In this document: positions 7,186 through 59,300 of the stretch, piece by piece
Numbering within the stretch: the first letter of the stretch is position 1
Layout of the letters: each line of letters starts with the position of its first letter
Assembly: GCF_001194135.2 (NCBI RefSeq)
Contig: NC_068986.1
Span: forward strand, 89,224,942 to 89,288,941
Reading direction: 5' to 3'
Length of the DNA: 64,000 nt
DNA from: Octopus bimaculoides
Taxonomy: Eukaryota
Program-made: the position numbers and the translations under genes
The notes under the pieces: generated by a model
Seen by the model: only the letters and a program-made list of their open reading frames with translations
The model's database searches: none
Told to the model about the DNA's origin: nothing

Positions 7186-7214
7186 GACAGATTCCAATTA
7201 ACCAACAATACTGA
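7186..7214 (+). CDS. Gene 1 putative terminal exon: (G)QIPINQQY*
   Basis: ttttcttttgcag|GA CAG ATT CCA ATT AAC CAA CAA TAC TGA; colinear with 59752-59780; AATAAA at 7251-7256. Confidence 0.55.
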
Positions 7215-20811: not shown

Positions 20812-20911
20812 GACTTGCAACGGCGAACGACTGCATTGAACAATACAATGCAAGATGTCCCAGTATAATAGGCCTGAACCCCATACGCAACCCAGACACT
20901 GGCTACTGCAA
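20812..20911 (+). CDS. Gene 2 exon A1 (100 nt): (G/R)LATANDCIEQYNARCPSIIGLNPIRNPDTGYC
   Basis: tttctag|GA...TGC AA|gtatat; C-x7-C-x16-C with NPD; LATA-ND resembles a signal peptidase site. Confidence 0.9.
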
Positions 20912-23900
20912 GTATATATATATTTTTACATTTCTTTATATTATTCTACATGTAATATCTACATTTATTTTATATGTACAGTAATATCAACTGCTTAATA
21001 CTAATTATTTTTAAGTTGACACAAACCTAGAAATAGTTACTCAGTGTAGTATTCCAATAGTGTACTGTCATCGTTCGGTTCAATACTGGACTGTAATTGA
21101 ACATGTTCAATGCAATAATGTGAAAACGCTCATAGTCGACTGCTAGAAAATTAATATATTATATAGCTGATTTCTAACATAGGTAGGAGTCAGAACACCA
21201 ATCTACTGATTTACATTTATTACAAATTATTATACCCATTCCGGAATATAAATGGAAAATTAGGCAGCTTTGAACTCAGAATATTACCATGGTTATACAG
21301 CCAGACAATCAAAGCTGTCATTAACCCTTGTAGAATTTAAATCCACTATGTAAATAATGCAGAATATTGCCAAACATTTTAAACATTTTTTTACATTCTG
21401 AAAGCAATGTTTATTGATATACTCTATATTTCAGTCGTTTGGTCGCATATAAAAGATGCGCTAATGCAGGTGAAAAGTGCGAAGATTACTTCGAGCAAAC
21501 CTTTCAGGATCAATGCTGTGGTAAGATATGTTCATAGATTTGATTTTTTGTTGGCAAAATGTGGTGTCAACAAGCTATACTGAAAAATAAAATATTGTGA
21601 TTTTCATATCCAGGGACGTCAACATCACATTCTAAAAGTTTCAACCTTTAAAAACAGAACTTCTGAGCAAGCATTTATCGCAAATGCTTAGCTCTCAATT
21701 TCTGGTGGTATTCTATTGACACTGTCGTGACAGACAGTACTCTAGTCTGTTCCATAGCGAATGACTTTGTTCCAGTGCTTGTGAATGTCCTGTTAAAAAT
21801 CATTTTGTTGTCCACACATCTTTTTCTTCCTTCACATATCTCTCCATTTACTCTTCTAATAATTTCTTGAAGGAAAAAAGACTACTGAATGTTATTACGT
21901 ACCATACTATTTCAGCTTCATTTTCTTCAGTATGTAAGTCAGACAATGAGATATTGGAAGTGTTCGCTGCTTACTCGCTTTGGATGTAGTCTAATAACTG
22001 CAAGATGCATGGGAATCTGTAATATATCATTAATAGTTCCTGTATCGTTGCACTAATTGAAAGATAGTGGCAGACACAGTACTGTGTCTGTCATGCTCAT
22101 GGGAAGATGAAATGTGCCTGTCCTCGCAAAAATGTGATCTGAAAGAACTGTTTCAGAGAATTTATATTCGTTTTAATTTAATCAGTATAGTCATTGACAA
22201 CGAGGTTCAATGAGTACTGTGTTTCTGTTAACATTCTTACAACATGTATCATTGAATCCTTGGATATTAGAACTGTTGCAGCAGTTGTGATTTGGACAGA
22301 AATATCTATTGTGCCGAAGAAGTCTGGCTTAGTGATGAGTATGGATTTTTCATCACTGAATTTGTGTACAAAATTGTTATTTTCTATCATGGTGACTCAT
22401 TCTTCCTTTCTGTCTGTCCATCGCCACAAAATCATAGATTTGGATGATACCCCCTTCGATACTGGCTGTACCCTAATGGCATCCAGTGTCATCATTTATA
22501 TTCTGTTCTTTGACGATGTTGAAGAATAAGAGCAAAGGGAGCGTACTACCTGATTTCTACAATAGCAACGAAAGAGCGTGCCAACTTGGTACAAATCTGT
22601 ATGTATTTCTTGCACTTTTAGTCTAGTAGGAAACATTCTTTTTTACAGAATGTTTTCTACTAGACTCGGCCGAAAGCCTTCTTGAAGCATTCTCATTAAC
22701 GCTGACGATATTTCTCACTGAAGAGGCAAAGATTCATACTTATGGAATCCTGATTCGTTCTTTATTGAGATGCTTTACACTCGATATATGTAGGTGTGTA
22801 TGTGTGCATTTGCGGGCGCGCATCCATATCTCAGCGCATATTCATTGTGTGTTCTAAGAGTCATTCTTCTATCTCTTCGATTCCGTTGTTTCCTACTTTT
22901 ATCCGGCCTTGTGCTACATATACCGACCACATGCATTTTGTTTTAATGCAGTTCATTTTAAGACCTACTGCTAACCTATGACTGCTCACTACTCTTCGTA
23001 TGGTTTGCAGCTGGTCTGTAATTTCATCGATCAGTACAATGCCACCTGTTAATCATTTATGTATTAGTTTCTCACCAGTCAATGTCCTTCATGACCATAT
23101 CTACACCGGCCGTAAAATGTTTCGGAGAGATGGTATTTCCTTGCCTGTCAGCCTTCCCAGTTGGGACCCTTACTAGTAGTGATAACAGAGCTATATCTGT
23201 TGCACATTCAGAGTTTGCATCTCTGAGCAGTTTGAAATATTGCGCCTCGAGCTACAACAGCTTGCATTTTCAGAGATTTCAACACTGCGTTCATCACGAC
23301 GCGATAGAAGACTTTTTCACTAATATTTCTCACGCTGAGAGCAACAGTATATGAAACCATATTAGTAATTAAATTGTAAAGTTCGAGTAGCTTTAACCTT
23401 TCACCGATGATTATATTTTCTGAAATGGAATGGAACTTTACGTACGTATATTTTAAAACAGTAAGTAGTAGGACGTGTCTTTGTATTCTTATGTTCTGGA
23501 AATGACGCATTAAATACATTTTTTCATACAAAACGAAAGAAACTTCTGAAACTGGCAATTTGCGGTCTAGCGTTATATTTCATTTTCTTTCAAATATATA
23601 TATATCAGGCCATCCCATAAGTGCTGTCCGATTTTACCTTTTTCAAAATTAAATGAAATTTAATAGTATTTTAGAATGTCTAATGGAATTAAAAATTATT
23701 TTTATGCATTTGCATACATTTAAAGTAATTAAATATTATTTTACAGAAAAATAGAATTAAAATTTCTTTGATTAAAACCCTTTCTAACATGGAAGTATCC
23801 CAAGAGCATTTTAGGCACATAATGCTTTATGAGTACAAAAAAGAAATCTCTGCATCCGAAGCGACTCGAAACATACACTCAGTTTATGGGAAAGAATGCT

Positions 23901-38600: not shown

Positions 38601-41600
38601 AGCAACATTTACATAGGTAAACGTTTCATTCTACATAAAAGCACACAGAAGAAAGATGTTTTAGACTTCTAGAATTATGGTCTAAAGTTTTATCGCTCTG
38701 ATCGTCCCATTGCTATTTGTTTACCAAGGACTACATTGTCCATGATTTCTTTCTAGTTTTGTTATTACTTGAAGATGTAGCTGCTATTTCTAGACATTTC
38801 ATGAACCACTTAAAGTCACCTTTCTTGAATACTGAGTGTATGAATTAATATGCTCTGCCCTTTTGAATAAGGTATGCTGAGAGTTATCCCAAGGAAACAA
38901 ATTATTTATAAGACTGTGCAGGGCCTGTCATGTTTCATCACGAATAAGATCAAGCAGTGACTCACTTGGTATGTATGTGCGTGTGACTGAGACATGATTG
39001 ACATTTTGTACAGCCCAAAACGGTGTACGATGAGTGACGTAACTGGCCTATCGGATTTCTCATGAGCTTCCGACTGGGCTTTCTCAAGTACATAGAAACT
39101 TCGTTTATTTATGATTTATAAATTGGAGTTGACAGGTCACAAATTCATAAACGTAACTCTATAATACTGTTTTCTGGAAACTACGCATAAAATGCTTTTT
39201 CTTAGTGACTGTTAGGATTTTAAAATAGACGAACCGTTTGCTATTGAATGTTTCAGGTTTGGAAGTCAACGAAATATTCAGAAGATTGTTATTGTAGCAC
39301 AAATGATTTATAGTAGGTAGAATAGTTTTCTGGTATCAGTTACAATACTGAGTGGGGTAGGTTTCAATTCATAATGCTTATGATCATTAAGATATCAATC
39401 AAATTATTTACCAATAATTGGTAAATAATCACTGCAAGTGACATTATGAGAATTATGGATAGCATGCTTGGCAAAACACGTTTCCAAAGCAAAGCACTAC
39501 ATTTACATAATGATCCCATGATTAGGAAGCATAATATGTGGGCCCTCTTCATAGACCTTCATCTTGATGTTATATTTCTGCGTAGCACTGCAAACGACAA
39601 AAGAATTGTAAAATATCTAGATTAATAAATCCGAAATTCTCACTGTCCGTCCGAAACCCATGTACCTCAGTCTAGATTTGTTGTACATTGTTATATAGCT
39701 ATTTGGAATCAGGATGATTCCGGGATTGAAAACCTGCCCTTCATTTGGTCCTTGAATATCAAGCATTGGAATCTGATTTAAAAGCATGTGGATAGCTATT
39801 TATTGCAGGCGAAGCTTGCCTGAATCACGCCATCTTGGTTGACGTATCTCATATGATGTCAGAGATCAAAGGGGCGATAGATAACATTCGCTTCGTTAAC
39901 GTCGAGATAAGAACTTTGGGACAAATTAGCCAACAGCTTGGAATTCGACATCAGAGTGGAGCAATAGAATGACTGCATTACAGAATAAATTCTCATCCTT
40001 CCATAACCTCTGATCAAACACCACCGGAGTATATAGTTATTATAGACGCATTATAGTCATGCTATTTAGCTCTCTCTCTCTAGTTTTGGTCCACAGGCCC
40101 AATTAGAACTTCGCAGGAGGTAGCTCAGAAGTCCACACGGAATGCGGTTTTCAAGCGAGTATGTTATAAGAGAGATTTTGAGAACAAAAATAAATCGCAT
40201 TAAACGTACAATTATCTTTTTAAACTACACAGAACAAAAAATAATCCAGAAACAGCCAGCATTTAAAAGTTATCAACATTACTTTTATCTAATTTTAAAA
40301 TTACAACACAATCCACATCAGTTGGAGTGCACAAAATCGCAGTTATATAAATAACAACCATTCCATCGTCAATCTCTACATTGCAACAGATAACCTGGAT
40401 TAGGAATAAAAGTTAATGTTTTAAATTATGGTACACCATGTTGTTTTTCGTCTTTATGATAAGGTTATTTTGATAAATTCAGACGGAATATGTCACATTT
40501 ATAGCCCATGAAGAACAACGTGACTGCATGGAAATATATAGATCAACTTGCTTGAAAGCCTTTAGCGAATATCCTGAACTGAATCCAGACAGAAACTATT
40601 GCAGGTACGTACATTTACGTACTGCTATCTCTAATATCTTTATATTTATTTAATATTTGCATAAATAAATAGATAACTGCGTAGTTAAGAAAATCCTTTT
40701 GTGACTATGTGATTCCGGATTCTGTTTCACTGCGTAACTCCTTTGTCAATATATATGTTAAAATAGTACCGTAAATGAATGTGCATGTGTGTGTCCGTTA
40801 TTGTTAGACAAGTGGTTTGCATCATCGTAACTTAGTGGTTCGTCAAACGATATCGATAGAATCAGTATCAAGTTTATATTATTTCCTTTCAGTTTTATCA
40901 ATTAATGTCCAGTTAAGAACTAAAGATGATTGCAGTCCAATAACCACAGCAATTAAAAGAACAAATGATGAAATACTACAACAACATATCAACAGTTAAT
41001 TACATTCGTACTGGACTTGAAATAATCGGTTGGAGTGCGATAGTTCTGTAGGTTACTTTACTTTGTTGGTACTAATTATATTGACTGAGCTAAGGATGGC
41101 GCATATCGATCACATTTACATTTGAACATACGTTTTACAGATTACTAAATATAAGGCTGATTTCTCATATAGAGACAAACACAATTATGTAACTCCAGCA
41201 TCCAACGACGAATTATTTTATATTCTTCGTCATATGAATGGATAATTACTCAAGGCAGTTATTTCACCACATAATGAATACAATGTTTTTATCGCTAGCT
41301 CTTTTGAACTTGGATATTAATATCGTGTTGGTGTATCTCTGGCAAAATGGTTAGAGTATACTAATATACTTAATAGGAGAGGTTAGGAAGGAAATAATTT
41401 AAGATAACATAAAACAAGATAAAATACAATTAAAAGTAGTAGAGTGAACATATGTAAGAGGTTTTATTTTCCGTAACAGATTTATGAGTATAAAAGTTTT
41501 AAAGGTAAAACGGCAACAAAAACCACAGCAGCAACAACATCAATAACTCGTCTCGCCCTTTTTAGATAGACTGGGGACCGTTGATGAAAAATGGGTCTTC

Positions 41601-42649
41601 TATCAAAATCTAAACATTGTTTTGATGAAGGGGTAAAAGCCCGAATACAACCGAAAGGGGAACTCCATATGAAGAAGGTTCTTCTCTCTGTTTGGTGGGA
41701 TTGCAAAAAGGTCTTCCGCTTTGAATTGCTACGAACTAATGCGCAACAATCAATAGGCAAATCTACTCTCAGTAATTAGAGTATTAGTGATTCGAAAGTG
41801 AATGGTATTTCATCAGGACAATGCAAGACCCTACACAGCAAAGATCATCACGTCACAAAACATCGAGGAACTTGACTGAAAGAGAGTTGCTCATCCGCCC
41901 TGTTCCCCAGACCTTGCACATTCAGGTTACCATTTGTTCGGTAGTTTACAGAATCATTTGGATGTAATAACTCTCGAAATAACTGAGGGAGTCGAAACTG
42001 ACCTTTCGGAGTTCTTCTCTTCGAAACCGAAACAGTTTTTCACTAAAGGGATCAAAAAGTTTACGAGTAGATGGAAATATGCTATAGATAATCATGGGAA
42101 CTATATTGACGTTTAAGTTTCATATGATCACTTGCTTTCCTTATTTAAAATTAGGACATTATTTATGGGATGGCCTGATATCCTTAATCACTTACATCCA
42201 TGAAACTTTCATATCCATAAATCTGTTACGGAAAAGTAAACCTCCTCATGCTTCTTCCAATTCTATGAATTTGTATTGTATTTTATCTTGTGTTATTTTT
42301 CATTTATTTTATTTCCGTCAAAACTCTCCTACTAACGTTATCCTGATATCTTACTATATGGGTATTTTAATATATCAATCTTTAAAAGATTATAACTTCA
42401 GTGTATCATTAAAACAAAGTATTGTCATTATTTACATTTGACGGTTATTTGTCCTCATCTTGTTTGTTGTTAATACCGTTGTATTCGGCTGATATACCTT
42501 CCAGCCTTCGTCAGGTGCCTTGGGGAAATTTCGAACTACTACGCCAATATGCCCGTTGGCATATGGCGTAGTAGTTAAGAGCGCAGGCTACTTACCCCAA
42601 GATTCCGAGTTCAATTCCAAGCAGTGGCCTGAATAATAATAATAATAAT

Positions 42650-42689
<40 letters not shown>

Positions 42690-45246
42690 TCAAAAATACC
42701 TTAGGAATGAGAACCCAGGTTCGAAATTTTCCCAAGACATCTGATGAAGGCTGGAGGGTATATCAGCCGAGACGTTGTGTTAACAACAAACAAGGTGAAG
42801 TCAAATATCTGCCATATGTAAATAATGTACATAATTCTTCATCTCTTAAATATAGAACTGGAAGTTACTGCAAATTTACACATATTTTTTACCAGTTTTT
42901 CCATATATATATATATACATACATCTTGCAGACGACTCATCGAATTCGAAAAGTGTGCTGAAAGCGATAACGACAAGCATTGCAAAATTTATCTTCGCTT
43001 ACTCTATACTATGAATTGTGGAGGTAAGAATGACTTATACAGAATGAATGTAAAGCATTCATTAAAATATTAAATCTAACTGTAACATTATTAATACGTC
43101 TTTCAGCAGCCATAATCAGTGTGATATTACAAATTTGAAACATCACAGCCACAAGAAAAATATATGCAACCTACCTTATTAAACGCTTTTCCAGACTAGG
43201 GTACTCTCTACTACACACAAGACAAATAACTCAACCTGATACACGCAAATACCTTAGACTGTATCTTTTTCTCTACATTTCTGAATGGCACCATAACTCA
43301 GAATTATGAATATAGAAGTCCCCCTCATGATGGCACTAGGTGTGATAGATCGATGATTCGGAAAACTAGATTACAGAGAGTAATGTGATTATTATACATT
43401 TTTCTTTAAATCTAAATCAAGTATCCCCATCGTTTCCTATACGCAAATTTACAATATTACATAGCGAAAATATTTTTGTCACCGTCAAGCAACGTATTTA
43501 TGTTGGCACTCTGAGGCTTACGACGTCGGGGGTTCCAGTTGATCCGATCAACGGAACAGCTTGCTCGTGAAATTAACGTGCAAGTGGTTGAGCATTCCAC
43601 AGACACGTGTACCCTTAACGTAGTTCTCGGGGATATTCAGCGTGACACAGTGTGACAAGGCTGACCTTTTGAATTACAGGCACAACAGAAACTGGAAGTA
43701 AGAGCGAGAGAAAGTTTTGGTGGAAGAGTACCACAGGGTTCGCCACCATCCCCTGCCGGAGCCTCGTGGAGCTTTAGGTGTTTTCGCTCAATAAACACTC
43801 ACAACGCCCGATCTGGGAATCGAAATCGCGATCCTATGACCGCGAGTCCGCTGCCCTAACCACTGGGCCATTGCGCCTCCACCAAGCAACGTAATATACA
43901 TTACAAATGATAACGTGGATTGTGAACAAGGTAAAAAGTTTTAAATTATGGTGTGTACAGTATAACACTTTCTTAGTATGCCAAACGTATTTTTTTAGAT
44001 TTAAAGAAAAAATGTTAAAATGTTTTGCAGTGGAAAAAATTTGCTTACGTGCGATTGAATCAAAATGTGAACATGCTGAAAAAGAGTATCCCATAAGTAA
44101 CCCAGATTTGAATTACTGCAAGTACATATATTTTCTTACATATCTGACTATTATTATTACATCTAATATTTACATATTTGTATATTTGATTGTACAGTTG
44201 CACCATAAATTATTAATTAGAAATGTTTGTTATATTGGTACAAGCCTAGAAATGCGTACTCGAAGTGTATTTGATTCAACAGAAAATAATAATTGACTCC
44301 TGCAAATTACACCGATCTAAACACGATGCATATCGACGACATTATGACTTGTACTGACTATTGGCAGATTACCGAATATATACGTAATTCCAAGGAGGGA
44401 CACAAGTCAAAAGATACACATTTTGGACAATGGTTCTTGAACAATTCAAGAGCAATTTCCCAAGTGAAATGCGCCAGCACCTTTTAAAATTTAATCTGCA
44501 TTTCCAAATTTAGAAATCAGTTTATAATACACATACAATTCCCCTCTCAAAAAGGAATTACATTGCTGTCCCGAAAATATAAAAATTAAACACAGTGACA
44601 ACTAGATTTTAGCATGTAGAAAAGATATTGTTACTAGATATTTTAACCGTAGCGAAATTTAAGCTGAGTACTTCGATAATCAAAAATATTGATGAAATTA
44701 TTAAAAGCTAGCAGGACATATTGAAAACAATATGAAATTTCAAACGAGCAAGAAATTTCAAAAACCTCTTTTCAAATCCTGACATTTCATTAAAACTGTA
44801 ATTTCAGATATATTCAAAATGAACATGTAAGCATAGGTGTGGCTATATGTATGAAGTTTGCTTCCCAACCGGGTTCAGTCTAATATACCTTCGAGCAAAC
44901 CAAGGACTTGTTAGTGGATTTGATTGGCAAAAACTGAAAGAACTCCGTCGTATATAGATATATATATATATGTGTGTGGGGGGGGGGTGAGTCTGTGTCC
45001 CCTTCCACCGCTTGACAACCGATGTTAGTGCGNNNNNNNNNNNNNNNNNNNNNNNNNNNNNNNNNNNNNNNNNNNNNNNNNNNNNNNNNNNNNNNNNNNN
45101 NNNNNNNNNNNNNNNNNNNNNNNNNNNNNNNNNNNNNNNNNNNNNNNNNNNNNNNNNNNNNNNNNNNNNNNNNNNNNNNNNNNNNNNNNNNNNNNNNNNN
45201 NNNNNNNNNNNNNNNNNNNNNNNNNNNNNNNNNNNNNNNNNNNNNN

Positions 45247-45278
<32 letters not shown>

Positions 45279-45813
45279 GCTTTCGGGTCGAATGTTTTTT
45301 TTATACGGTGCTGTATTTTACAATCCTGTAAATACTAATAATGGTATTTTTTATATAAGCTTAAAGCTTATAGCGATCACCGTGCAATGACTAACGAAAT
45401 AGTTTGATAAGAGGGCGTATAAGACCTCGACAGAAAAAAGCAGGCTTTCCTATCCGCGTTGGAGTCGAAACTACATCCCTTTGTTAACGCGACTAAGTGT
45501 GTTACCTTTACACCAGTGAATCGTGTAACGGTAACACACTTAGTCGCGTTAACGAAGGGATGTAGGTTCGACTGCCACGCGGATAGGAAAGCCTTCTTCT
45601 TTCCGTCGAGGGCTTATATACCTCGTTATTAGAGTATTTTCCTTAGCCATTTCAGATATGTATATTTCTTATAATTTAGAACTAACAGTAAAAAGTTGTG
45701 ATTATAGTACTCGGAGTACTATAATGACAGCTTTAACTGTTTGGTCTAAATTCTAACATATATAAATAATCATCTATTTGGCTAATTTCGAGGTCTCATT
45801 GTTTTGTAGTTAC

Positions 45814-45885
<72 letters not shown>

Positions 45886-47362
45886 TTAAATGAAGTAGCC
45901 AGTAGTACAGTCTGAGTGGGAATATATGGTTAAGTTTATGGAGCTCTCTGATAATCTCTCTTTGAGTCTCCTATCCCATCATGCCATAAATAGTTTAGTC
46001 ACATCGCCAGAGAAACTGACATCGGTGGCTGCGCTTTTCTCTTGGGCGTAACCTTGGTATTAAACTTGAATATCTGGACCTTGAATGTGACTCTGGTACT
46101 CGCACCCACTGCACGTACGACCATCTTTGTAACCTGATCGTTGATATAAGCCTAAGATGAAGGTATAGGCATTGGTACCAGTGTCACTGGTGATGTGTTG
46201 TGACTAAGCTCGTCAGTGCTCTTCAGTGCTCTACCAACATGCTCAAGTAGAAGATAGAGGCTCGATTAATAATATAGAGGTAAAGTTATTATACACGCAT
46301 AGAACAGACACGATATTTATACAGATTACAAAGATTGCACACAGTAATAAACAGACGAAGCGTCAACAAAAGACACGAATGGAACAATATCACCCATCCA
46401 CTACAACACCACGCAACACGACGACTAAAGACAGAAGGATGAGAAAAACTGTTACAAACATTCCAGAACAAACAAAAGACAACCATGCACATACTTATGA
46501 TGAAATATACGAAATAGAGATAAATAGATAAACAAAAGAAACTATACGAAAAGGCACGGGTACAAACAATAGAGTAAGCAAACCAAAATATATGCACACA
46601 AACATATGCAGTAACTTCACAAACTGCCGCAACAGCATGAACATCAACAACAACAACTGCCCCAATGGTAACGACATGAACAAACACGCAAACATAGAAT
46701 GCTACAAAGCAATATCAAAATAAGGGCCAAGAACAGATTTACTAGATTGCTGATATTTAGCAATGGTTTTTCCCATTGTGTTGATTTGTCATTTTCTATG
46801 ATCAATAAAACTATCGGAACTTTTGACGACACAGATATGTTGATATATAGAAAAAACTGTCCAACTACCATCACGGCTCAGTCAACCATTTAAGATTATT
46901 TTCATTTCATTTCATTTCATTTGAGTTCAGTCCAGGTACATATCTACCTGTGTATCTATAAATATATCTCTCTATTTGCATATTGGTATATCTATATACT
47001 CAACTATGTACCAATCTATCTAGCTAGGCAATCATATCTACACTCACTTCTGTATATCTCCTCTCATAATACCGATAAGTATTTGAACTAAACAAAATAT
47101 GAATAATGATGCCACGGCATAGTTATAGCCGTTGATTTGGAACGTTAAAAGATAAAAGCGTAATATCTACAGTTATTTGCTAACACGGTTATTTCGCTTT
47201 AATTCAACTATCTATCGATAATTATTTTATCGTATTAATTCATAAAACTTCATGATATTGTCTCACTATGTTAAACATTTCGACTGCAGTTGTGATTAGA
47301 TCACGCAAAAGCAGAATAATAGCGGTCTTCTCCTCCTCCTCTTTATCTCTGTATATATGTGT

Positions 47363-47398
<36 letters not shown>

Positions 47399-50300
47399 AA
47401 ACGCGTGCGTGCATACACACATATACACGCGCACGCGCACACACACACACATACNNNNNNNNNNNNNNNNNNNNNNNNNNNNNNNNNNNNNNNNNNNNNN
47501 NNNNNNNNNNNNNNNNNNNNNNNNNNNNNNNNNNNNNNNNNNNNNNNNNNNNNNNNNNNNNNNNNNNNNNNNNNNNNNNNNNNNNNNNNNNNNNNNNNNN
47601 NNNNNNNNNNNNNNNNNNNNNNNNNNNNNNNNNNNNNNNNNNNNNNNNNNNNNNNNNNNNNNNNNNNNNNNNNNNNNNNNNNNNNACGTTCTGAGTTCAA
47701 ATTCCGCCGAGGTCGACTTTGCCTTTCATCCTTTCGGGGTCGATTAAATAAGTACCAGTTACGCACTGGGGTCGATATAATCGACTTAATCCGTTTGTCT
47801 GTCCTTGTTTGTCCCCTCTGTGTGTAGCTCCTTGTGGGCAGTAAAGAAATAAGATACGTTAGCACGCCGGGCGAAATGCTTAGTGGTATTTCGTCTGTTT
47901 TTACGTTCTGAGTTCAAATTCCGCCGAGGTCCATTTTGCCTTTCATCCTTTCGGGATCGATAAATTAAGTACCAGTTGTGTACTGGGGTTGATCTAATCC
48001 ACTGGCCCCCTCCCCAAAAATTTTGGGCCCTGTGCCTAGAATAGAAAAGAATATTTATTGACCGAAATGGTAAATTAAGATAGCAATTAGAAAACACGTT
48101 ACTTTTGCCAAGTAAGGTCATAACTATGAACTTTATATTAATGGTACGGACAGTTTTTCCTTAGTCCTCCATGTACGCAAGCTTTTGTTATTATCATCCA
48201 TTTGAATTACAAACTACAAAATACACATTACATCAGATAAGTTGGAATGGACATTATAATGATCATAATTTTTTTCTTTTAAATCTAACTGAAGTACGTC
48301 CATCAAGTGCCACACACAAAATCGCAGCAATTCAGGCAGAAAGCAACTTCGTCACCATAAAGTCACGTAATATAGATTAAAAATCTAATACTGATTAAGA
48401 CCAGAATTAAATTATTTAATTTATGTTGTGTCTTCTAGTATTTCCTCATTGTATCAAGTTTATTTTTGATAACCAAAGAATCTGTCCAATTTTTACGTGT
48501 CGTAGATGATGACAAATGTATAGACGAGTTCCAAAGAATTTGTCGCTCAGGGGAAGACATGTATGCTATGCGGATTCCAGATACAAATTTCTGCCCGTAC
48601 GTATATTTTCTTACTGCTTTCTTACAACGTAACTATACAGTGATACATTCAAATGTTTAATCATGGATTAGTGGAGAGTCTTGAGACATTCGCAGTTGAT
48701 GGTGGTGCAAAATTTTCTAAATTTTACTTATATTTTACAAAAGTTTAATCTTTTACTTTTTTCAGTTCCAGGGATGTTGCCGTGCCCCGGTATGGTGTTG
48801 CTAAACATTCATTAATGCTCCTTTAATAGTTGTCATTTGGTGAATGCGGGAGTTTGATGATGCTGCCCTCATTCGCACTTCTTACCATGAAGTTGGTTCA
48901 TCTGGAACTCTTGTTAGCAGGAGATCTAGTTCAGTTTTGGAGTCATTAACATCCACACTGTGTAGATCTCTCATCCCCTTCGCGAGGATATTGAAGGGTT
49001 GTGGTCCCTTAAATCCCAAGCTATTGCAGGATATGGACCTACATTTTGACGGCAAGTGAGGGATTTAGACATTGCAACATGGCGCACTATTTTGATGTTT
49101 GTATAACTTTCCCTGCAAAGCTTACGACAAGTCCTTCTAGGATCTTCCAGAGATATATCATGACATATTTTTCCAGTCTTCGCTACAATGAGTAAAATCC
49201 TAACGTTTCCAGTTTTTCCCAGTAGCTAATTTGCTTCATTGAGCCTATCTTTTTACATGTAGCTTCCCAAGACTGCTTCACATTCTGCTATTAAAGGAAA
49301 TTTTTGTACTGCCTCATGCAGTTATGGCACAGATTTGGGTGTGTGAAACGGCAGTTTACACAGTCGTCTGCATGCCAGCAAATACCGTGCAGGTAAAACT
49401 TACATACCTGTGTGTTCTCCATCTATTTTCCATTTGTATTCTCCAGGTTCTTTCTTGTCTTAATGTTTTCTTTAATTTTTAATTATTGGTACTTTCACGT
49501 ATGTACATCCTACCTTATTTCTTTATTTGGTTGTTCTTCTTGGGAGCTGATTTTTGGATCCTTCTTATCTTTTATTTGTACCGTCATCATCTTTTTGTCC
49601 CTGTTTCTTTTTAGCAGCTTTTGATTTCCTTTCCTCTCTTAATTTCATTTTCTTCTTTTTTTTTACCCTTTCATCTCTTTCATTGTGGTTGGGCCACTAC
49701 TGATGGTGTCTCCGCTTGCCGATCTCTCCAGCATGGTTATAACAGAATATGTGATCCTCATATTTTGATGAGTGTTAGTATAATATAAGCGAAAAAAAGA
49801 TTTTGTAGCTTAGCGTGTCTAATAGGTTCGAAATGCTTAATACATAATTTGATAAGTTTTTATTTATTTTTTAGTAAGGACACTTTTTGTCTTCGTCATA
49901 TATACCTGTTGATACCTTCACTGAATATGATTTTATAAAAAGTAAAATAGAATAAATAATATTAACCATTAAAATATAGCATTGTGGGGGCTCTGTGTAC
50001 GTAAGGAATCAAAAATATGTTTATATAAAAATTATAAAACCCCAAATTATTTTTGATTATAGTTTCTCGTAACCCGAGAAAGACGGTTCTGAAATTACTT
50101 GATGCACAGGATGCACAAACGATTTATTTATAGTGATCCAATATTTGAGCTGCACATTAGCTCACTTCTTCCATCAAATAGGCGTTATCTGCTCCATGTA
50201 AGGCATCGAACTGATCGCCATGCAACAGAATATGAAGTATTATTTTGAAGAACACATCCCATCACCCGATTCAGGCATTGAAACCTCGATCTCGTCATTG

Positions 50301-53300
50301 AGAGAGCAACATCCTAAGCACTAGATCATGCACCCTAGCTGTTAGGGTATTCTTTCTATTGAAATGTCTTATGCAGTGTTACCAGTAATTTTGTTCAAAT
50401 CTCTATCATTTACCAAAATTTGAGGCAAGCGATCAGGGCACAGTCGTATAGATTTTATGCATTGCCATTGAACCTGTAGTTCAATCGAGATCAACGCAGT
50501 CCTTGAGAAAATAATATTTAAATATTAAGTTAATTGAAATTATGAAACGAAAGATTCAGAGGTTCTCATATCAAACACCCAATGTTTAGAATTGAATTAC
50601 CTACATGGTATCGAAGTCGTCATGAATAAATAAATATTATTCAATCCATTGTAGCGGTTGGATAATTCATGATTTTTAGTCACAACAATGATATGTAAAA
50701 CAAAGTAAAGATATCGTTTTGACTTATTGTTAATTCTTAAATTTAAAACAATCTTGTCAGAATTTTTTAAACGAAGTAGGCCAAATATTTTTGTTTTAAA
50801 TTTCATTTTATTTCCAGAGAGATGTATGTTAAGAATCCCTGTCTTAATTAGTAAATATTCTATATAAAAGTTAGACACAGTGGCAATTTTATCTAAGAAA
50901 ATAAACGATGTATCTATAACTGGGTATTTAAAACTGGTACATAATTTGTCAATACTAGTAACGTTTAAAATCAGTACATTAATAATCGAAAATATTTTAA
51001 ACATCGTCAGCATTCTTCTTGAGAAATTATTTTTCTCCTGTTTGTATATTCCAGACGCCTCCGAGTATACATGGTATGCGCTGATGAGGAGAAACATAAG
51101 TGTAAAAAGCACTTCGACGACCTCTATCTCGAAAAATGTACCAGTAAGATTATATTTATTCATTTTGCCTTACTGGTGATTCTACTATGTTAATTCAAAA
51201 CCAGGATTAAATTTCATATCTCGCTAGCTTTGATTTTGTTTTCAATAAAATTTAAATTTTGAAATATCAACTTTACCAATGGAAGCATATATCTTCATCA
51301 GTTCCTGATGCAGTCGTAGAGGCGGTTTCCTCATATTTTGTAGACCAGACAAGAAATCAGTAAGAGTTGGTACTGTCACTACTAAACTTCTGAATAACGG
51401 AGGAATACTCATAATAGACATTCTTATCACAAACTACTGCATAGCAAAGCAAACAGAGTGGTAAATGGTGTAGATTCTGTTACTGATCGTAATGCTTCCT
51501 AAGTACTACGATCTTCGATTATGTCAGCATGGGCGTACCAACAGAAAAATCAAACATGCAAAAAAGTTGATGCGTAGAGATTTTGTGAATTGCTTGAGAT
51601 ATTACGCTATAGCAACCATAATCTGTGATCAGATATTTCTACGAGAAATAAATTCAGCATTAATCAGAAACCATGAACTAATTCAACACGAGATAGATGT
51701 TGAATCATATCGCACAGTTTAACAACAAGGCACCTTTGAGGATATTGTATATATGGAAACTCTCGTCATTGGAGTAAAAACCTCCCATGTCCAGTGTGTC
51801 CACGTTTCTTGATGACATTTAGGAACTATCAGGGAATGAAATGAATTGTTAAATTGAGCCAAACAAATTCACAGTGTCACCAGCGTTGGGGAAACTGATG
51901 TCAATCATAAATCTTTCTGAAACCCCTCTCGAGACAATATTAACATGGCTCGATGGATATAAGAACACAGAATCTTGGCTAACAACAATGCACCTAGTAA
52001 TGTTATAGGTATGGTTGCAGATCATAGTGCGTATGAGAAGCGTTTAGCGGCTTTATTGTGTCATATTTGTGATGATGTATCATAGTAATCATGATGATAA
52101 TGTTGCTACAAAACGATCCGGTTAAGAATCGAGCAACTGGAGCAGAGCGATCCTAATGATTTTTCTTGAGTACATGCGATCTAAGATTATTACCGGAAAG
52201 CCTGACATCCCTGGAAAGTAGTTTTTCTTTCTTACTACATATATGTGGTGAAATTTTATGTACGTATGTTTCATGAACAATGCCAGGGAGGAAATGCTGT
52301 ATCACAGTATCCTCAAAATAACAGATTAAGTGTGGTTTAGTAGTTAATCTTCAAGAACATTGAATTATTTTGATACTCATTGTTTAATGATTTATACCTA
52401 ACAATTTCCTGAAAAATCTTGATTGATGGCCTTATAGAAACCCTTATTCAAATATACCTTACCAAGCACATTTTCAAACAAGAATTCAATCGCTTACAAA
52501 GAAAACAAAACCAGGAGGCCTATAACATGCACTATTCATCCATACTTTAATATTTTCGTTGTATTTGTGCATAACAGCGTGAACTATATAGAGAAATTGA
52601 AAAGTATAAACACGGTATAAGAAAATTGTTGAAAATATAAATACTCACAGGGAACCGAAAATCAGATACATATTTTCAAACACACCAAAATCCAAAAAAT
52701 ATATTATAATCTAATGAATACAAATATTATTTTTAATCGACCATTAAAATTACACCTCCAACCAAGCGGTTTTCTTTGCACAATATCAAAGAATTTTTAT
52801 AGCATCCATTCCATCTTCAACCCACATTTTGTAGATGACAAAAGATAAGGGAAACGCAGATTAGAATTGTTTGAATTTATAGTACTATGTAATTTTTCGT
52901 CGTTATAAGAATATTTATGAATTGAAAAATCCAAAATGTCTAATTTGCAGGACATGTAGAAGTAGGTGATTGCGAACCAATGTACTTATCAACTTGCTAT
53001 GAAGCCATAAGAGACTACCCACACAAGAATCCGGATACAAACCTCTGCTTGTAAGTACATATACAGGGCGCGATGAATAAACTGTCGTCTAAATTACGCA
53101 AAAACGAAAATAACACTGACAACTCATTTCAACAGATATATTTACCAAAATTACATAAAAAAAACCTTGAAATACTAAAGAATAAATCAATTCAATAAAC
53201 TCGCCATTGGCTACAACCACGGCCTTCAGACGACTTCGGAATCTCCTGCAACTCTTCAGGACGGTCTCCTCGTTTAAGTTGGTGAACGCTGCCATAATCA

Positions 53301-56300
53301 TTGCCTTCAGTTCATCCCTGGTGTTACCAAGGAGTTTCGTTGGTCCCTCGCTCAACTGTACCCCACACATAATAAACGAGGTTGCAGTCTGGGGAGGTAC
53401 GTGGCCAGGTGTTAGGGGTGATATGGTCGCGGAAAACTGTCTGACAGCCATGACTGTTCTCCTGCTTCTGTGACATGGTACAGAGTCCGGTTGCCAGACA
53501 AAGGGTCTTCTAATAGCCACCCTCTTCACCCATGGCAGCACAACTTCCTCCAGGCACTTGATGTAGGCCTCCGTGTTGAGTATGGGTCCGTGTGGGAAAA
53601 TGAATGGTGACATTACGTCGCCATCACTAGTGTTCACGACAAGCACCATGATATTGACTGGATATTTGACTTTTTTCACTCGGAACATGTTGTCAGATTG
53701 ACACCCTGACTCTCTGAAATGTTCATATTAGAGCTTCAAGCGCGAATTCCAAGCAGTACAGCATGTTGTTTCCAAAGTTGTGACAGAGTGAATAGTGACA
53801 TGGTGCTATTTTTCTCACAAACGGTGACCAACCGACCATAATGTATAGTCAAGAAAATCAAAAACAAACATTTTGCTCATGCGCGAAATTAAAAATATAT
53901 AATGGCGACAATTTACCCATCGCATCCTGTATATTTATAACTACTCATTCTATCATTACTACAATTTATATGTAAATTTTTTTTTATCTATGTAAATCAA
54001 TAGCCCTGTGGTTAAGAAGACCGTTTAACAACTACATGGTTTCGAATAAGGTTTCACTGCGCTTCCACTTTGGCAATTGCACCAGGCGACTAAAGTCTTA
54101 TGATTAAATGTGTTAAGCGGAAGCTTTACGGGAAAACGTTATAGAGGAGCATTAGTTTCCATGTGTGTGTATGTGTGTGAGTGTGTGGATGTATGTGTGT
54201 AAGTGTATATGCTCGTCTGTCACTGCTTGACTACCGCTGGAGTCATTTACATACATGATCGTAACTCAGCATTTCTTCAAATAAAACATTAACTCAATAC
54301 CAATCATATTTAGATGAAGTAATGCGATGATATGAAGACTTAAAACACTCCAACGTAATGCCTAAAAGTGGCCGAATTCCAATAACTGAAAGCAGTAATA
54401 TAACAAGAGCAGTCAGAGAGAGCAAACATCCGCCAAGGCAACACCAACGTCCTCTCAACGATTAACCGGAGATGCTTTTTAAAATGAGAATATTTGAAAT
54501 AAACTCGACTGCTGTCATAAACAAGAATACTAAAAACGAATCCGACCAGTCTTAAAAATTAAGTAAAAAAAACTGAAAAATAATCCGGTAACTGATCAAT
54601 CCTGTACCTGATCGATCCGAATGGTAGTCATGGAATGTAAAGGTAGCTATAGAAAATTTAGTAACAGTAATAAATAGTTTATCCTTATCTGATTCAAGCC
54701 AAAGTTAACAAATCCTCCATTCATAATAATTACGGCCTAAAGGGAAATAATTGAGGAAGACTTGAAGGTTAATGCTAGATGGTAATCATGTTGTTTTTGG
54801 CACTCTGTCGCTTACGACGTTGAGGGTTCAGTTGATCCGATCAACAGAACAGCCTGCTTGTGAAATTAACGTGCAAGTAGCTGAGCACTCCACATACACG
54901 TGTGCCCTTAACGTAGTTCTCGGGGATATTCAGCGTGACACAATGTGACAAAGCTGACCCTTTGAATTACAGGCACAACAGAAGCAGGAAGTAAGAGTGA
55001 GAGAAAGTTGTGGTGAAAGAGTACAGCAGGGTTCGCCACCATCCCCAGCCGGAGCCTCGTGGAGCTTTAGGTGTTTTCGCTCAATAAACACTCACAACGC
55101 CCGGTCTGGGAATCGAAACCGCGATCTTATGACAGCGAGTCCGCTGCCCTAACCACTGGGCCATTGTGCCTCCACCCGCCTGCACTAAGGAGAAGGTAAT
55201 AAAACACTAAAATAAAACATCGTTGTATCATTACCTACAGGTAAGTAATGATATTTTTTGATAAGAGATTAGAAATAATTGGTTCGAATGATATAGTTAA
55301 CCAGAGTATTTCACCGGACTGTTACTAAATATATCTACCCCAGAAGGACGCATATCAACTACATTCAGATTTGAACACAAGTTTAGCAGATTACCAAATA
55401 TAACGCAGATTTGTACCATACAGACAAGTATACAATTGTGGGACTAAACAACAAACTGTTAAAAATAACTCCTTTCTATGACAACGAATACTTGATATTT
55501 TGAAGTGGTACATATATATGTTTTCAACCAGAAATTCGAAATATTGCCAAATTTAAGAATAATGATTGTTTTTGTTTGTTTCTTTTTTTAAAATTTGGAA
55601 ATAATTGTTATCGATTTCTTTTCGTCACCCAGGCGCCTGGCGGTATACAAAACGTGTGCTGAAAATTACGAAGACAAACATTGTTTGCTATCATTTGAAA
55701 AAAAATTTGAAACTTATTGCCCTAGTAAGTTCTATTTTATTAATAATGAACTATTTGCAAAGACATAGAGTGGCTACGAACAATCTTCAAATGAGTTAAA
55801 GTATGAAAACGGGCCCTATGCTGTTCTGTAAATCTGCATGAAGTACTTTATCATTTGCTACAAAGAAAATAAGAAAACATTTACACCAAAAGTATCGTTG
55901 TCGTCTTTCAAAACACGACGTAATAGATGACACATGATAACACAGATTAAGACCAACACAAAATGTTTTATGTTGTATCAGCATTTTAAGGGGTAAAGAA
56001 ATAAAATTAAAAATTTGTATATTTTTTCAGAGATGGACAGCTGCATTGAGAAATTCAAAATATATTGTCCAAAAGTGGAAAAAGATTTTCCCACTCGTAG
56101 ACCAGACAGGTATTACTGCAAGTACGTATACTTCTTTTCCAACTTCTGTATTATTTTTACATCACATATATACATGTTTATATATTTATTTATGCAGCAG
56201 TACCATCGACAATTAATTTTGAATATTTTTTACATTGGTACAAGATTAAAAATGCTTAGTTGATGTGTACTAGATTCAATAGGAAATACCCTTTGATTAG

Positions 56301-59300
56301 TGCTAACTGTATCGATCTAGGAATGGCTCATACCAATAAACCAACTTTATGCAGATCAATAAATATATAGGTAATTTCCGATATAGGCACAATTCCACGA
56401 ATGTACGATTAGGGGAATGGTTTTTGAAAAATTCACATTCGTTTCTAAAAAATATTATTTCATACTTTAGAAAAGTCATAGTAATGTCTCTTCATTTCCA
56501 AAAACTTCTAAATCACATTTTTATGTATAAATATGATTAGTAAACTTTTTGTCGCTTACTTTTAATAGTAAATCTTAAAACATCACTTCGTTACAATTTC
56601 TATACGGAATTCGCTAGTAATTTTTATAATTATAATTAGCCACTGGATCAGAAATCAGATATTAAAATATATTAATACTTCCTCTTTTAAATTGGAAATA
56701 TTTTACGAAATATGAAAATTATATACTGTGGTAATTTGTTTCAGAAGCTAAAGAATGTGTGTATTGCAAGATATTTTAAGTTATTACATACGTTGTGAGT
56801 TTAAACCAAAGTACATCGATTATCCAGAATATTACCAAAGATTTTCCCTTCGTTTTTCAGACGTATGGCCGCATATAGACAATGTGCTATAGATAAGGAA
56901 CACAATTGTACAATGCACTTCGATATGCTGCATTTAATCTCTTGTGAATGTAAGATCCTTTTTAATAATTAATTTTGTTTTATCAAAGGATAGGCTGCGT
57001 AATGACCGTTACTTCAAAACAGAAATTATATTTGTCAATTTACGTTTCACATTAAATTCACAATAATGTTTGAGAATGCAATATTGCTTTTGCCAGTATT
57101 AGTATGTACATATTTGCTTTCAGATATCACATCATGATAGAATCATAGAAGCGCTGCGATGTGCTGAGTACTAAGTTATTCCATCAGTTAGAGGAATGCA
57201 CCAGATATCATTTCGCCTCCAATTACTTTTGTGCATGGCCACATTTTCTCTTTCAAGCTCCCATTTTTCCATACACAGCTTCCTAAATTACCTGTGGCAG
57301 ATTACTAGATATTCTTAAATTTACACATCATCTCAGATTTCCTTTCTACAGATTTGCGATACAGTCTTCGATGTTACTTTTTCGTGGATGCTTCTGCGTA
57401 CCTCTTTATTGATTATCTGATCCAAGTACGAGGTTCCTTGAAGTTTCCATCTCCCTAGCTACTCTTACTTACGTTCCACTCTGAAATCATATGCCTCAGG
57501 TTAGCTGTGCGCACAACCATCGAAAACATTTGGGTTTTGTATATATACAGAGAAAGATGTAGGAAATAACCATACGAAACAAAGGAACTCAATCCACGGG
57601 AATTGTTGAGATCCTAGTACAGTGATTTCGTAGAATTCTTGATTATGAACCCTGTCGAACTTGTATACCATCTCATGCTCTATTAAAGTAGAGTGCCGGT
57701 ACTTCCTTGATCTGTATTTTTCCAGTGCTCTTGCATTCCATATGGCAATTGGTCTATCTTCCAGGAACCATTCCTGTCGCGCCATCAACACGATACTCTC
57801 ACATGTAGACGTATAGGGTAGAAATTTCTAAATCCGTGTTGATACAGTTGTGGTATAGAGTTACTTTGGGGGGTGGGGTGAGTTTATCATTCTTCCCGCA
57901 CAATCACAGCAGATTTCTACGGACGGATAGATTCTTATTCGTGAACTCGAAGCTATTACAATTCATCAGGGAATATTTTCTCTTCGAGCCGGTAATTTTA
58001 TTATGGAAATGACATTTCCACTGGTCCTGTTAGGAGCACCTCTTCATTTAGATTTACCTGCCAGCTAAGAAAGAAATCTTGGAGTTAGTTGACTACCAGA
58101 GATAACCATCCTCTATTCTGAATTAGGGAGCAGCATGCTATCCATCAAAGATGCTACTTCGAACCAGGGTGACATTATATTCCAAGAAATTGTTTCCATC
58201 ATTTCTGAAATCAATATTTTAATAAACAATACTGCACATCATGCAGCAGTAGCCTCGCTTGTTATATCCTTAGGGTTTTTATCATTCTATTTATTTTCGA
58301 ATTATGCGTTGATAGATACCCTCCCATATAATATCGATGTTATTAAGTTAACATAAATGACCTTCGTAATTTTATAAAGTAGTCAATTAAGCCACATGAA
58401 AAAACTTAAAAGAAAATTGAGAATGCGAAAATATGAACCATCCTCAGAATATAACGGTCCTGTGTTCTCAAAGAATTGGAAATAAACTGGATTTAATTCT
58501 CAGAGTTAAACCCTATTAATTTGTAAAACATCAAACAAAATATAATTAAAATAATTTCAAACATGAATTACTTTGTATAGCGTCAAGCAAAAATATAATT
58601 ATTATAATTATTCCTTATATCTAAACCAATCATGAGAGCTAAGAGGATGGCTTTCACCTACTTCACCATCTTCCAAATCTTGTTCTTATTGTATCGAATT
58701 GATTGAATTCAGATTCATTTGCTGAAGACATATTTGATGTGGGTATATTCATACAAGACACATTAGGTTTATATTTTGTATTAGCTTTCACTTTCACTGT
58801 CGAATAATTTTATTTTCAGTGTAATACATATCAGAAGGTCAAAAACACTGGATGTACTATTACTGAGGTAAATATATATTTCTAACACTGTTATCACTGT
58901 AATGCCAATTAAATATCGCTTGTACAACATCATAATTCCGCTGCAATAACTTAATTGGTGGGTGTAGGTGACATAAGATTTGCGGGCCCTTCATAAAAAG
59001 TGAGTGTGATACAGTTAAGGTCTCATTTAAACGGTCGATGTTCGATTCCTGTAGGAAGCACGTGAGCAGGGGGGAGATTGAAAATGGATCGGATTATGGA
59101 GAGGTATGTCAGAGCATGATGTAGCTTTGTGAGCTATATATAAGAGTGACGAGAGATTGAGACACAAGAGAGCCGACGATGCCTGAATGGGAGGCGTACG
59201 AGACTAACCAGCTCCGAGGTTAGTCTCGTATACCAGCTTTATACCAGCTTATACCAGCTTTAGAAGAGACAGAGGGAGGAGAGAGCATGTTTGAGCCTGG

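What the first reader, a model, noticed from the sequence alone, without database searches (positions are those of the whole stretch)
20812..56949. Phase architecture allows combinatorial, chimeric modules by alternative splicing
Seen in sequence: every A exon enters in phase 1 and exits in phase 2, and every B exon does the reverse. Any A can therefore splice in frame to any downstream B, and any B to any downstream A, always rebuilding a complete six-cysteine module. Inference: one locus could make proteins of variable length and chimeric domains (Ai+Bj). This would be a somatic diversification route loosely analogous to Dscam-type exon arrays. The architecture could equally be only a by-product of exon duplication.
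Basis: partly seen in the sequence, partly recalled or inferred. Interest (0 to 1): 0.7.

Follow-up and report, generated by a model that had tools for sequence, protein, structure and literature searches.

The report
Phase-matched exon pairs, octopus repeat gene
An octopus gene builds a secreted protein from nine copies of a small six-cysteine helical domain, each split over two exons with matching reading-frame phases; the pattern is real, but tandem exon duplication explains it and nothing found here shows that cells shuffle the exons.

Summary
On the + strand, 9 A exons (91 or 100 nt) and 8 B exons (86, 89 or 92 nt) alternate between 20812 and 56949. Every A enters in phase 1 and leaves in phase 2; every B does the reverse. 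The locus is Octopus bimaculoides LOC128248155, an "uncharacterized protein" in RefSeq. I rebuilt both RefSeq isoforms exactly from the window. Both keep all exons in genomic order and differ only by shifted splice sites. The expected B6 exon is missing from the read sequence. It is present in gap-free O. sinensis and O. vulgaris loci, and its flanking anchors bracket two assembly gaps, so it is either hidden in a gap or deleted. All A-to-B joins are open, but 4 of 33 B-to-downstream-A joins create a stop codon. I found no docking-site-like complement. A and B halves stayed paired through duplication. The module is a confidently predicted three-helix bundle, weakly but repeatedly similar to the RGM N-terminal domain. 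The family is found only in Octopus and evolves fast (dN/dS about 0.56). Verdict: an ordinary phase 1-1 module array made by exon-pair duplication. Combinatorial splicing is formally possible (2,212 stop-free paths) but has no support here.

The parts
15342..15378 (+). Exon 1, coding part: ATG and signal peptide MKDCISICLLIA, ending G|gtaagt in phase 1
   Evidence: tblastn of the RefSeq N-terminus, sequence, exact rebuild of the CDS
20812..20911 (+). A1 exon, 100 nt, phase 1 in / 2 out; three Cys
21435..21520 (+). B1 exon, 86 nt, phase 2 in / 1 out; four Cys here (three conserved plus one extra in ..QCCG)
25699..25798 (+). A2 exon, 100 nt
28650..28741 (+). B2 exon, 92 nt; ends in T, so joining it to A8 or A9 would make a stop codon
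30204..30303 (+). A3 exon, 100 nt
30931..31761 (.). Assembly gap inside the A3-B3 intron; no A- or B-type exon expected here
   Evidence: The orthologous introns (L001 3528-4974, L002 3531-4931) hold no A- or B-type exon
34829..34920 (+). B3 exon, 92 nt
37080..37170 (+). A4 exon, 91 nt; isoform X1 uses a GC donor after 37166
38154..38242 (+). B4 exon, 89 nt; read in a shifted frame in isoform X1
40505..40604 (+). A5 exon, 100 nt; isoform X1 uses an acceptor 22 nt upstream, so the exon starts at 40483
42932..43023 (+). B5 exon, 92 nt
44031..44121 (+). A6 exon, 91 nt up to the GT donor; both RefSeq models cut it at 44117 (T|GCAAGT, a GC donor) and join it directly to A7
44122..48505 (+). A6-A7 interval: holds no B exon, two assembly gaps (45033-45246, 47455-47685) and a repeat at 47686-48056. 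The B6 exon present in O. sinensis and O. vulgaris is missing from the read sequence
48506..48596 (+). A7 exon, 91 nt
51055..51143 (+). B7 exon, 89 nt
52951..53050 (+). A8 exon, 100 nt
55633..55724 (+). B8 exon, 92 nt
56031..56121 (+). A9 exon, 91 nt
56861..56949 (+). B9 exon, 89 nt
58820..58824 (+). Coding start of the terminal exon (ag|TG TAA): completes a Leu codon, then stop. It enters in phase 1, so it can follow any B exon

Best explanation
The region is the body of one annotated octopus gene, Octopus bimaculoides LOC128248155. It encodes a secreted protein with a short signal peptide and about nine tandem copies of a 60-64-residue six-cysteine domain. Each domain is predicted to be a three-helix bundle.

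Each domain is encoded by an exon pair. The A exon gives helix 1, the conserved YP..PD loop and Cys 1-3. The B exon gives helices 2 and 3 and Cys 4-6. The intron inside the domain is phase 2, and the introns between domains are phase 1. Each A+B pair is therefore a class 1-1 module.

The array grew by tandem duplication of A+B pairs, partly as a two-module long+short unit, and then by duplication of whole genes. Every copy inherited the same phases, so the regular phase pattern is a historical by-product.

Shown: the exon map, the phases, the match to the annotated mRNAs, conservation of the architecture in two other Octopus species, and co-duplication of the A and B halves.

Inferred: secretion, the fold, a distant relation to the RGM N-terminal domain, and constitutive inclusion of all exons as the main mode of expression. 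Diversity in this family is written in the germline, through many modules and many fast-evolving paralogs, and need not be made by splicing.
For: - Exon map and phases.
- Annotation: 100% identity to XP_052824892.1 (isoform X2) and XP_052824891.1 (isoform X1). Both CDS were rebuilt exactly from the window with all exons in order.
- Conservation: the A/B HMM scan of the gap-free O. vulgaris locus found 29 strictly alternating A/B exons, and the O. sinensis locus alternates the same way. A crude automatic check placed A donors in phase 2 and B donors in phase 1 for most of them.
- Co-duplication: the A and B similarity matrices agree (Mantel r 0.42, p 0.0004). Long A (100 nt) goes with B of 92 nt and short A (91 nt) with B of 89 nt in 13 of 14 modules.
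- The duplicated unit includes intron sequence: intron flanks are 0.43-0.49 identical among copies, against 0.27 for random intron.
- Family: 25 hits for the module profile in 1.84 billion representative proteins. All 11 whose source was looked up, including the query gene, are from Octopus. The other 14 include two likely spurious repeat translations (P0008, P0012).
- Fold: AlphaFold2 model with pLDDT 92.1, three helices.
- RGM_N similarity: Pfam E 0.0014-0.004; PDB profile search, top four hits all RGMB, E 0.026-0.37; the only Foldseek hit is RGMB 6z3m; a precomputed RGM_N hit on the O. sinensis ortholog.
- General rule: class 1-1 modules flanked by phase-1 introns spread by exon duplication and shuffling (PMC7502776).
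Against: - No transcript reads were available, so constitutive inclusion rests on RefSeq models only.
- RefSeq joins A6 to A7 through an unusual GC donor. That means either a missing exon in the assembly or a truly irregular transcript.
- Some computational models in this family join non-adjacent exons. The current RefSeq model of the upstream paralog joins A0 to B' and skips B0. The O. vulgaris model CAI9724703.1 joins A6 to B10 and A11 to B13. So skipping may occur.
- The RGM_N similarity is below every curated threshold.
Confidence: 0.8

Rival explanations
1. Regulated combinatorial or mutually exclusive splicing of the A and B exons, Dscam-like, gives many protein variants, including chimeric Ai+Bj domains, as a route to somatic diversity.
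For: - The phases allow it: 2,212 stop-free ordered paths.
- The signal exon ends in phase 1 and the terminal exon starts in phase 1, so any subset of modules is readable.
- Intron flanks near the exons are as alike among copies as the exons are.
- Non-adjacent A-to-B joins appear in two computational gene models of relatives.
Against: - Both annotated isoforms contain all exons in order.
- The exons alternate between two types and are all used together, unlike clusters of same-type alternatives.
- No reverse-complement copy of the conserved upstream-A motif was found, and no site is complementary to several upstream-A elements beyond what shuffles give.
- 4 of 33 B-to-A joins give stop codons.
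- The A and B subtypes stayed paired through evolution.
- Orthologous intron sequence aligns at about 70% well away from the exons too, so the flank similarity needs no special constraint.
- The O. vulgaris model comes from an EVidenceModeler consensus of ab initio, protein and transcript evidence (PMC10700109). It is not proof of a transcript.
Confidence: 0.04
2. Low-level or occasional cassette skipping of whole modules or of single B exons occurs, as in many repeat-domain genes. It changes protein length without being a dedicated diversity system.
For: - Phase symmetry makes skipped products readable.
- In the upstream paralog, two RefSeq releases differ by inclusion of B0: A0-B0-B' in the old model and A0-B' in the new one.
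- The paralog LOC128249887 has six predicted isoforms. Two have in-frame 17- or 19-residue deletions inside a module.
Against: No such isoform is annotated for this gene. All the evidence comes from computational models.
Confidence: 0.35
3. For the irregular A6-A7 junction only: B6 is truly deleted in O. bimaculoides, and the GC donor at 44117 is used in vivo. This gives a half module with two cysteines. The alternative is that B6 is hidden in an assembly gap.
For: - Both RefSeq models use T|GCAAGT and keep the frame.
- Cutting before the third Cys of A6 leaves an even number of cysteines in that remnant.
- The read sequence between the two orthologous anchors holds no trace of B6.
Against: - B6 is intact with AG and GTAAGA sites in O. 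sinensis and O. vulgaris.
- The anchors bracket two gaps of unknown true length plus a repeat insertion.
- A gene-model builder may choose the GC donor only to keep the reading frame open.
Confidence: 0.4

Closest known systems
RGM N-terminal domain (Pfam PF06535, RGM_N; structures of RGMB such as 4uhz, 4ui0, 4bq6, 6z3m)
   Same: A small cysteine-rich domain. The central motif is alike: F/Y-C-k-x-L-r-x-Y-x-x-C-x(6-7)-C. It is the only family to appear in the Pfam, PDB-profile and Foldseek searches. Several single-module relatives end in a hydrophobic tail that looks like a GPI signal, and RGMs are GPI-anchored (my own knowledge).
   Different: All scores are below threshold: Pfam 17.8 bits against a cut-off of 24.2, PDB E 0.026, Foldseek TM 0.42. 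There is no RGM_C / von Willebrand D part, no GDPH cleavage motif and no RGD. The domain is repeated about nine times here, against once in RGMs. This protein has no hydrophobic C-terminal tail.
Class 1-1 extracellular modules spread by exon duplication; the closest case is the five tandem all-alpha, three-disulfide CC domains of RECK (PMC7502776)
   Same: Modules bounded by phase-1 introns, repeated in tandem in a secreted protein. All-alpha fold with three presumed disulfides. Confined to one protein family and not widely shuffled.
   Different: Here each module also carries an internal phase-2 intron, so it is an exon pair. The family is restricted to Octopus, and the bundle has three helices, not four.
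Drosophila Dscam1 exon 4, 6 and 9 clusters (mutually exclusive splicing)
   Same: Tandem arrays of duplicated exons that encode halves of a domain, with matching phases.
   Different: Dscam clusters hold many exons of one type, of which exactly one is used, guided by docking and selector RNA pairing (my own knowledge). Here two exon types alternate and all are included in the annotated mRNAs. No docking-like complement was found.
FGFR2 IIIb/IIIc and CD44 variable exons (my own knowledge)
   Same: CD44 includes phase-compatible cassette exons in many combinations.
   Different: Those cases rest on transcript evidence. None is available for this locus.
GDNF/GAS1 (GFR-alpha-type) cysteine-rich helical domain
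   Same: UniProt labels one relative (A0A0L8GPX5) 'GDNF/GAS1 domain-containing protein'. Both are all-alpha, disulfide-rich extracellular domains.
   Different: No module here matched the Pfam GDNF model, even at E up to 10.

Membership tests
Class 1-1 module array made by tandem exon duplication | Module bounded on both sides by phase-1 introns | tested here: met
   All 9 A exons start in phase 1 and all 8 B exons end in phase 1. The signal exon ends in phase 1 and the terminal exon starts in phase 1.
Class 1-1 module array made by tandem exon duplication | Copies are homologous, including flanking intron sequence, and the halves were duplicated together | tested here: met
   Module alignment with six invariant Cys. 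Intron flank identity 0.43-0.49 against 0.27 for random intron. Mantel r 0.42, p 0.0004.
Class 1-1 module array made by tandem exon duplication | Extracellular or secreted protein | tested here: inconclusive
   There is a hydrophobic N-terminus (MKDCISICLLIAG), and relatives have similar leaders. No signal-peptide predictor was available.
Dscam-type mutually exclusive exon cluster | Tandem exons of one type, of which exactly one is included per mRNA | tested here: not met
   Two exon types alternate, and both annotated mRNAs include all 17. This rests on gene models only.
Dscam-type mutually exclusive exon cluster | Docking site complementary to selector sequences next to each variable exon | tested here: not met
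   The upstream-A motif has 4 copies, all on the + strand and all upstream of A exons, and none reverse-complemented. No 100-nt bin is complementary to more elements than shuffles give (7, against 5-8 in shuffles). This was a crude test. A thermodynamic scan timed out.
Dscam-type mutually exclusive exon cluster | Many isoforms observed in cDNA | not testable with these tools
   No read-level transcript data could be reached. The protein collection holds only X1 and X2.
Repulsive guidance molecule (RGM) family | RGM_N domain above the Pfam gathering score | tested here: not met
   Best score 17.8 bits against a cut-off of 24.2. 3 of 9 modules hit, at E 0.0014 or weaker.
Repulsive guidance molecule (RGM) family | RGM_C / partial von Willebrand D domain with a GDPH autocleavage site | tested here: not met
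   No RGM_C hit. No GDPH or RGD in the protein.
Repulsive guidance molecule (RGM) family | Fold of the N-terminal domain (small disulfide-linked helical bundle) | tested here: inconclusive
   The model is a three-helix bundle with pLDDT 92. The only Foldseek hit is RGMB 6z3m_I, but at E 4.6 and TM 0.42.
GDNF/GAS1 domain | Match to the Pfam GDNF model | tested here: not met
   No hit at E up to 10. There is only a UniProt label on one relative.

The most novel reading that the evidence does not exclude
The octopus uses this phase-symmetric array, and its paralogs, as a regulated splicing system. It skips or recombines half-domain exons to produce many secreted variants, including chimeric Ai+Bj three-helix bundles, for example for recognition in immunity or in the nervous system. 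This would add a third route to the known cephalopod ones of gene-family expansion and RNA editing.
Probability: 0.04. Interest if true: 0.75.

Novelty: new member of a known kind. Interest (0 to 1): 0.25.

Why it matters
As stated, the finding is ordinary. Matching exon phases in a repeat-domain gene are the expected trace of tandem exon duplication, and the gene is already annotated in RefSeq.

Two things have modest value:
- The family behind it is undescribed. It is found only in Octopus, is secreted or possibly GPI-anchored, evolves fast, and has a confidently predicted three-helix, six-cysteine domain. The only relatives detected are the RGM N-terminal domains, whose solved complexes contain BMP-family ligands such as GDF5 (entry 6z3m).
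- The phase symmetry explains why gene models at these loci disagree between annotation releases and between species. Any exon subset gives an open reading frame, so annotations here need long-read support.

If regulated exon choice were shown, it would be a new diversity mechanism in a mollusc.

Tried and rejected
- Pfam and PDB sequence searches with the whole repeat region gave nothing above threshold.
- The word-indexed protein search with the short module alignment found nothing. The exhaustive profile search was needed to find the family.
- I looked for a degenerate B6 in the read part of 44122-48505 with HMMs, three-frame translation and sensitive blastn against the O. sinensis intron. 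None was found.
- I looked for a docking site by motif complement and by 8-mer complement clustering. There was no signal above shuffles. An RNAduplex scan timed out.
- I considered whether the conserved 130 nt upstream of the A exons is a selector or hairpin element. It contains an A/T-only inverted repeat (AATTAAA..TTTAATT) in some copies. It is explained well enough by shared ancestry and normal near-exon constraint, because orthologous introns align at about 70% far from the exons too.
- I considered treating the non-adjacent joins in the O. vulgaris model as transcript evidence. I rejected this because the model is an EVM consensus (PMC10700109).
- Literature searches for the locus names and for an octopus cysteine-rich family found nothing.
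Full report
What is there. The window is AT-rich animal DNA (about 34% G+C) with five assembly gaps. A repeat search and a six-frame self-comparison showed two kinds of short coding segments alternating on the + strand. The A type reads ..DCxxxYxxxCxxxxxxYPxxxPDxxYC. The B type reads RLxxYxxCAxxxxxxxCxxxFxxxxxxxC. I placed every exon end on AG/GT sites by hand. Between 20812 and 56949 there are nine A exons of 100 or 91 nt and eight B exons of 86, 89 or 92 nt. The finding's limits are exactly the start of A1 and the end of B9. Every A begins with two bases of a split codon and ends TGY NN|GT. Every B begins with one base and ends one base into a codon.

Identity of the locus. The conceptual translation is 100% identical to Octopus bimaculoides LOC128248155, an "uncharacterized protein" with isoforms X2 (540 aa) and X1 (546 aa). 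I rebuilt both coding sequences exactly from the window. X2 consists of:
- a signal-peptide exon at 15342-15378, ending in phase 1;
- A1 through B5;
- A6 cut four bases early at a GC donor (44117);
- A7 through B9;
- a terminal exon starting at 58820 (TG TAA).
X1 differs only by a GC donor in A4 (37166), a frame-shifted reading of B4, and an A5 acceptor 22 nt upstream (40483). Neither isoform skips an exon.

Gaps. The gap at 30931-31761 lies in the A3-B3 intron. The orthologous introns in the two gap-free relatives hold no A- or B-type exon. The gaps at 45033-45246 and 47455-47685 lie between A6 and A7, the one place where a B exon is missing. In O. sinensis (L001) and O. vulgaris (L002) a normal B6 exon sits there (ag|ACGCC...CCTC|gtaaga). 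The sequences just upstream and downstream of it map to window 44629-44690 and 48056-48121. Nothing B-like remains in the read sequence between these anchors. B6 is therefore either hidden in a gap or deleted, and I cannot tell which from this assembly.

How far "any to any" holds. All 45 A-to-downstream-B junction codons are sense codons. Of the 33 B-to-downstream-A joins within this gene, four create a stop: B2 or B4 (both ending in T) joined to A8 (GA..) or A9 (AG..). Counting ordered alternating paths from the signal exon to the terminal exon gives 2,308, of which 2,212 are stop-free. The formal capacity is real but not universal.

Why the pattern exists. The exons are copies of one A+B unit.
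- Similarity among copies extends into the introns. The mean pairwise identity is 0.43-0.49 within 80-160 nt of the exons, 0.50 in the exons and 0.27 ± 0.03 for random intron.
- Modules come in a long form (A 100 nt + B 92 nt) and a short form (A 91 nt + B 89 nt). These stay paired in 13 of 14 modules of this gene and its upstream neighbour.
- The A-half and B-half similarity matrices agree (Mantel r 0.42, p 0.0004).
- The gap-free O. vulgaris locus shows 29 strictly alternating A/B exons. Most have the same donor phases by a crude automatic check.
Phases inherited through duplication need no further explanation. Modules bounded by phase-1 introns are the classic class 1-1 type (PMC7502776).

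Tests of the Dscam-like idea. The conserved motif about 75-95 nt upstream of the A exons (AATTAAATGTTTTAATTTATG) has four copies within three mismatches. All are on the + strand upstream of A exons, and none is reverse-complemented. No 100-nt bin in the gene is complementary to more of the nine upstream-A elements than shuffled elements give. The array also does not look like a mutually exclusive cluster, because two exon types alternate and all are used together.

Hints in the other direction come only from computational models:
- The current RefSeq model of the upstream paralog joins A0 to a truncated B' (4280-4343) and skips B0. An older model included B0.
- The O. vulgaris model CAI9724703.1 joins A6 to B10 and A11 to B13. 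That annotation is an EVidenceModeler consensus of ab initio, protein and transcript evidence (PMC10700109).
- The paralog LOC128249887 has six predicted isoforms with small in-frame deletions inside modules and none with chimeric modules.
I read these as showing that any exon subset gives an open frame, which makes gene models unstable. They do not prove regulated choice.

What the protein is. A profile of the nine modules, searched exhaustively against 1.84 billion representative proteins, found 25 hits. All 11 that I looked up, including the query gene, come from O. bimaculoides, O. vulgaris or O. sinensis and are unnamed, except one that UniProt labels "GDNF/GAS1 domain-containing". The other 14 were not looked up, and two of them (P0008, P0012) look like spurious translations of a repeat. 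Many relatives have a signal peptide, one to four modules and a hydrophobic C-terminal tail that looks like a GPI signal. This gene's product ends right after the last module.

AlphaFold2 with a 42-module alignment gives a three-helix bundle (helices 5-21, 31-44 and 48-61) at pLDDT 92.1. The A/B boundary falls one residue after Cys 3, at the start of helix 2. The only family that appears in sequence and fold searches is the RGM N-terminal domain:
- Pfam RGM_N at E 0.0014-0.004, below the curated cut-off;
- the top four PDB profile hits, all RGMB, at E 0.026-0.37, aligned over FCKALRAYAGCTQRTSKAC;
- the sole Foldseek hit, RGMB in 6z3m, at TM 0.42;
- a precomputed RGM_N hit on the O. sinensis ortholog.
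There is no RGM_C domain, GDPH or RGD. This is not an RGM. At most it is a distant relative of that one domain.

Orthologous exons of O. bimaculoides and O. sinensis are 55% identical in protein and 72% in DNA, about the same as the alignable introns. dN/dS is about 0.56 over 400 codons. Apart from the cysteines and a few motif residues, the protein evolves quickly.

Function. This part is inferred. The product is a secreted chain of small disulfide-stabilised helical bundles whose surfaces change fast. That fits a binding or recognition role. Ligand binding like that of the RGM N-terminal domain is a lead only.

Verdict. The architecture is an ordinary result of exon-pair duplication in an already annotated gene. 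The proposed somatic diversification is possible on paper but unsupported. The decisive data are long-read cDNA and a closed assembly of the A6-A7 interval.

Noticed in passing
window 1953-2052 (A0), 3760-3851 (B0), 4280-4343 (B'): This is the 3' end of an upstream paralog, LOC106874482. The A exon expected between B0 and B' is missing, so two B exons follow A0. The current RefSeq model joins A0 to B' (...FRCQQRHAYQNCTMKKNEKCSKEI*). An older model joins A0-B0-B' with a frame-shifted tail (YKDTRIKIVQ*). The current model has no signal peptide and looks incomplete at its 5' end.
   Followed up: partly
window 62144-62173 (+): A second signal-peptide-like first exon (MKYAISMCFL.., followed by gtaagt), similar to the one at 15342, suggests that another paralog starts downstream. 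In O. vulgaris a copy 91% identical to the 15342 exon lies downstream of a 14-module run (L002 57923-58021), and no signal exon separates the M-like and U-like arrays there. Gene boundaries in this cluster may differ between species or be mis-called.
   Followed up: partly
window 56969-60360 versus 4377-7634 and 11010-11396: The sequence after the last B exon of this gene is homologous to the sequence after B' of the upstream paralog, with a further partial copy near 11.0-11.4 kb. Whole gene ends were duplicated, not only exon pairs.
   Followed up: no
window 23768-24900 and 41545-42200 (+): Two copies of a mariner-like transposase remnant (173-aa ORF, 75-83% identical DNA blocks) sit in the B1-A2 and A5-B5 introns.
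   Followed up: no
window 26150-26650 (+), 43460-43940 (-), 54830-55230 (-): Three copies of another repeat lie in introns; two of them are 92% identical over 300 nt.
   Followed up: no
window 53089-53688 (-): A 199-aa ORF in the A8-B8 intron, on the opposite strand, looks like the C-terminal part of a DDE-type transposase. This is judged by eye only.
   Followed up: no
window 47686-48056, 3264-3700, 11830-12050 (+) and 13826-14100 (-): A repeat of about 217 nt per unit (two tandem units at 47686-48003) directly follows the third gap, where B6 would be expected. Copies also occur in the O. sinensis locus (L001 29129-29464).
   Followed up: partly
window 37166/37167 and 44117/44118: Both RefSeq isoforms use T|GC(A/G)AGT donors four bases upstream of the normal GT donors of A4 (X1 only) and A6 (both). 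In each case the third cysteine codon of the A exon is removed. Whether RNA reads support these donors is unknown.
   Followed up: partly
about 75-95 nt upstream of A1, A4, A5 and A7 (for example 20719-20739, 36990-37010, 40410-40430, 48405-48425): A conserved intronic motif, AATTAAATGTTTTAATTTATG, contains a short A/T inverted repeat. A weaker form is recognisable upstream of all ten A exons, including A0.
   Followed up: partly
paralog LOC128249887 (not in the window; proteins P0007, P0029-P0033): Six predicted isoforms. Two drop 17 or 19 residues that hold Cys 4 and Cys 5 of one module (RLWxYExC......FCR). This suggests an internal alternative site or a split B exon in that paralog.
   Followed up: no
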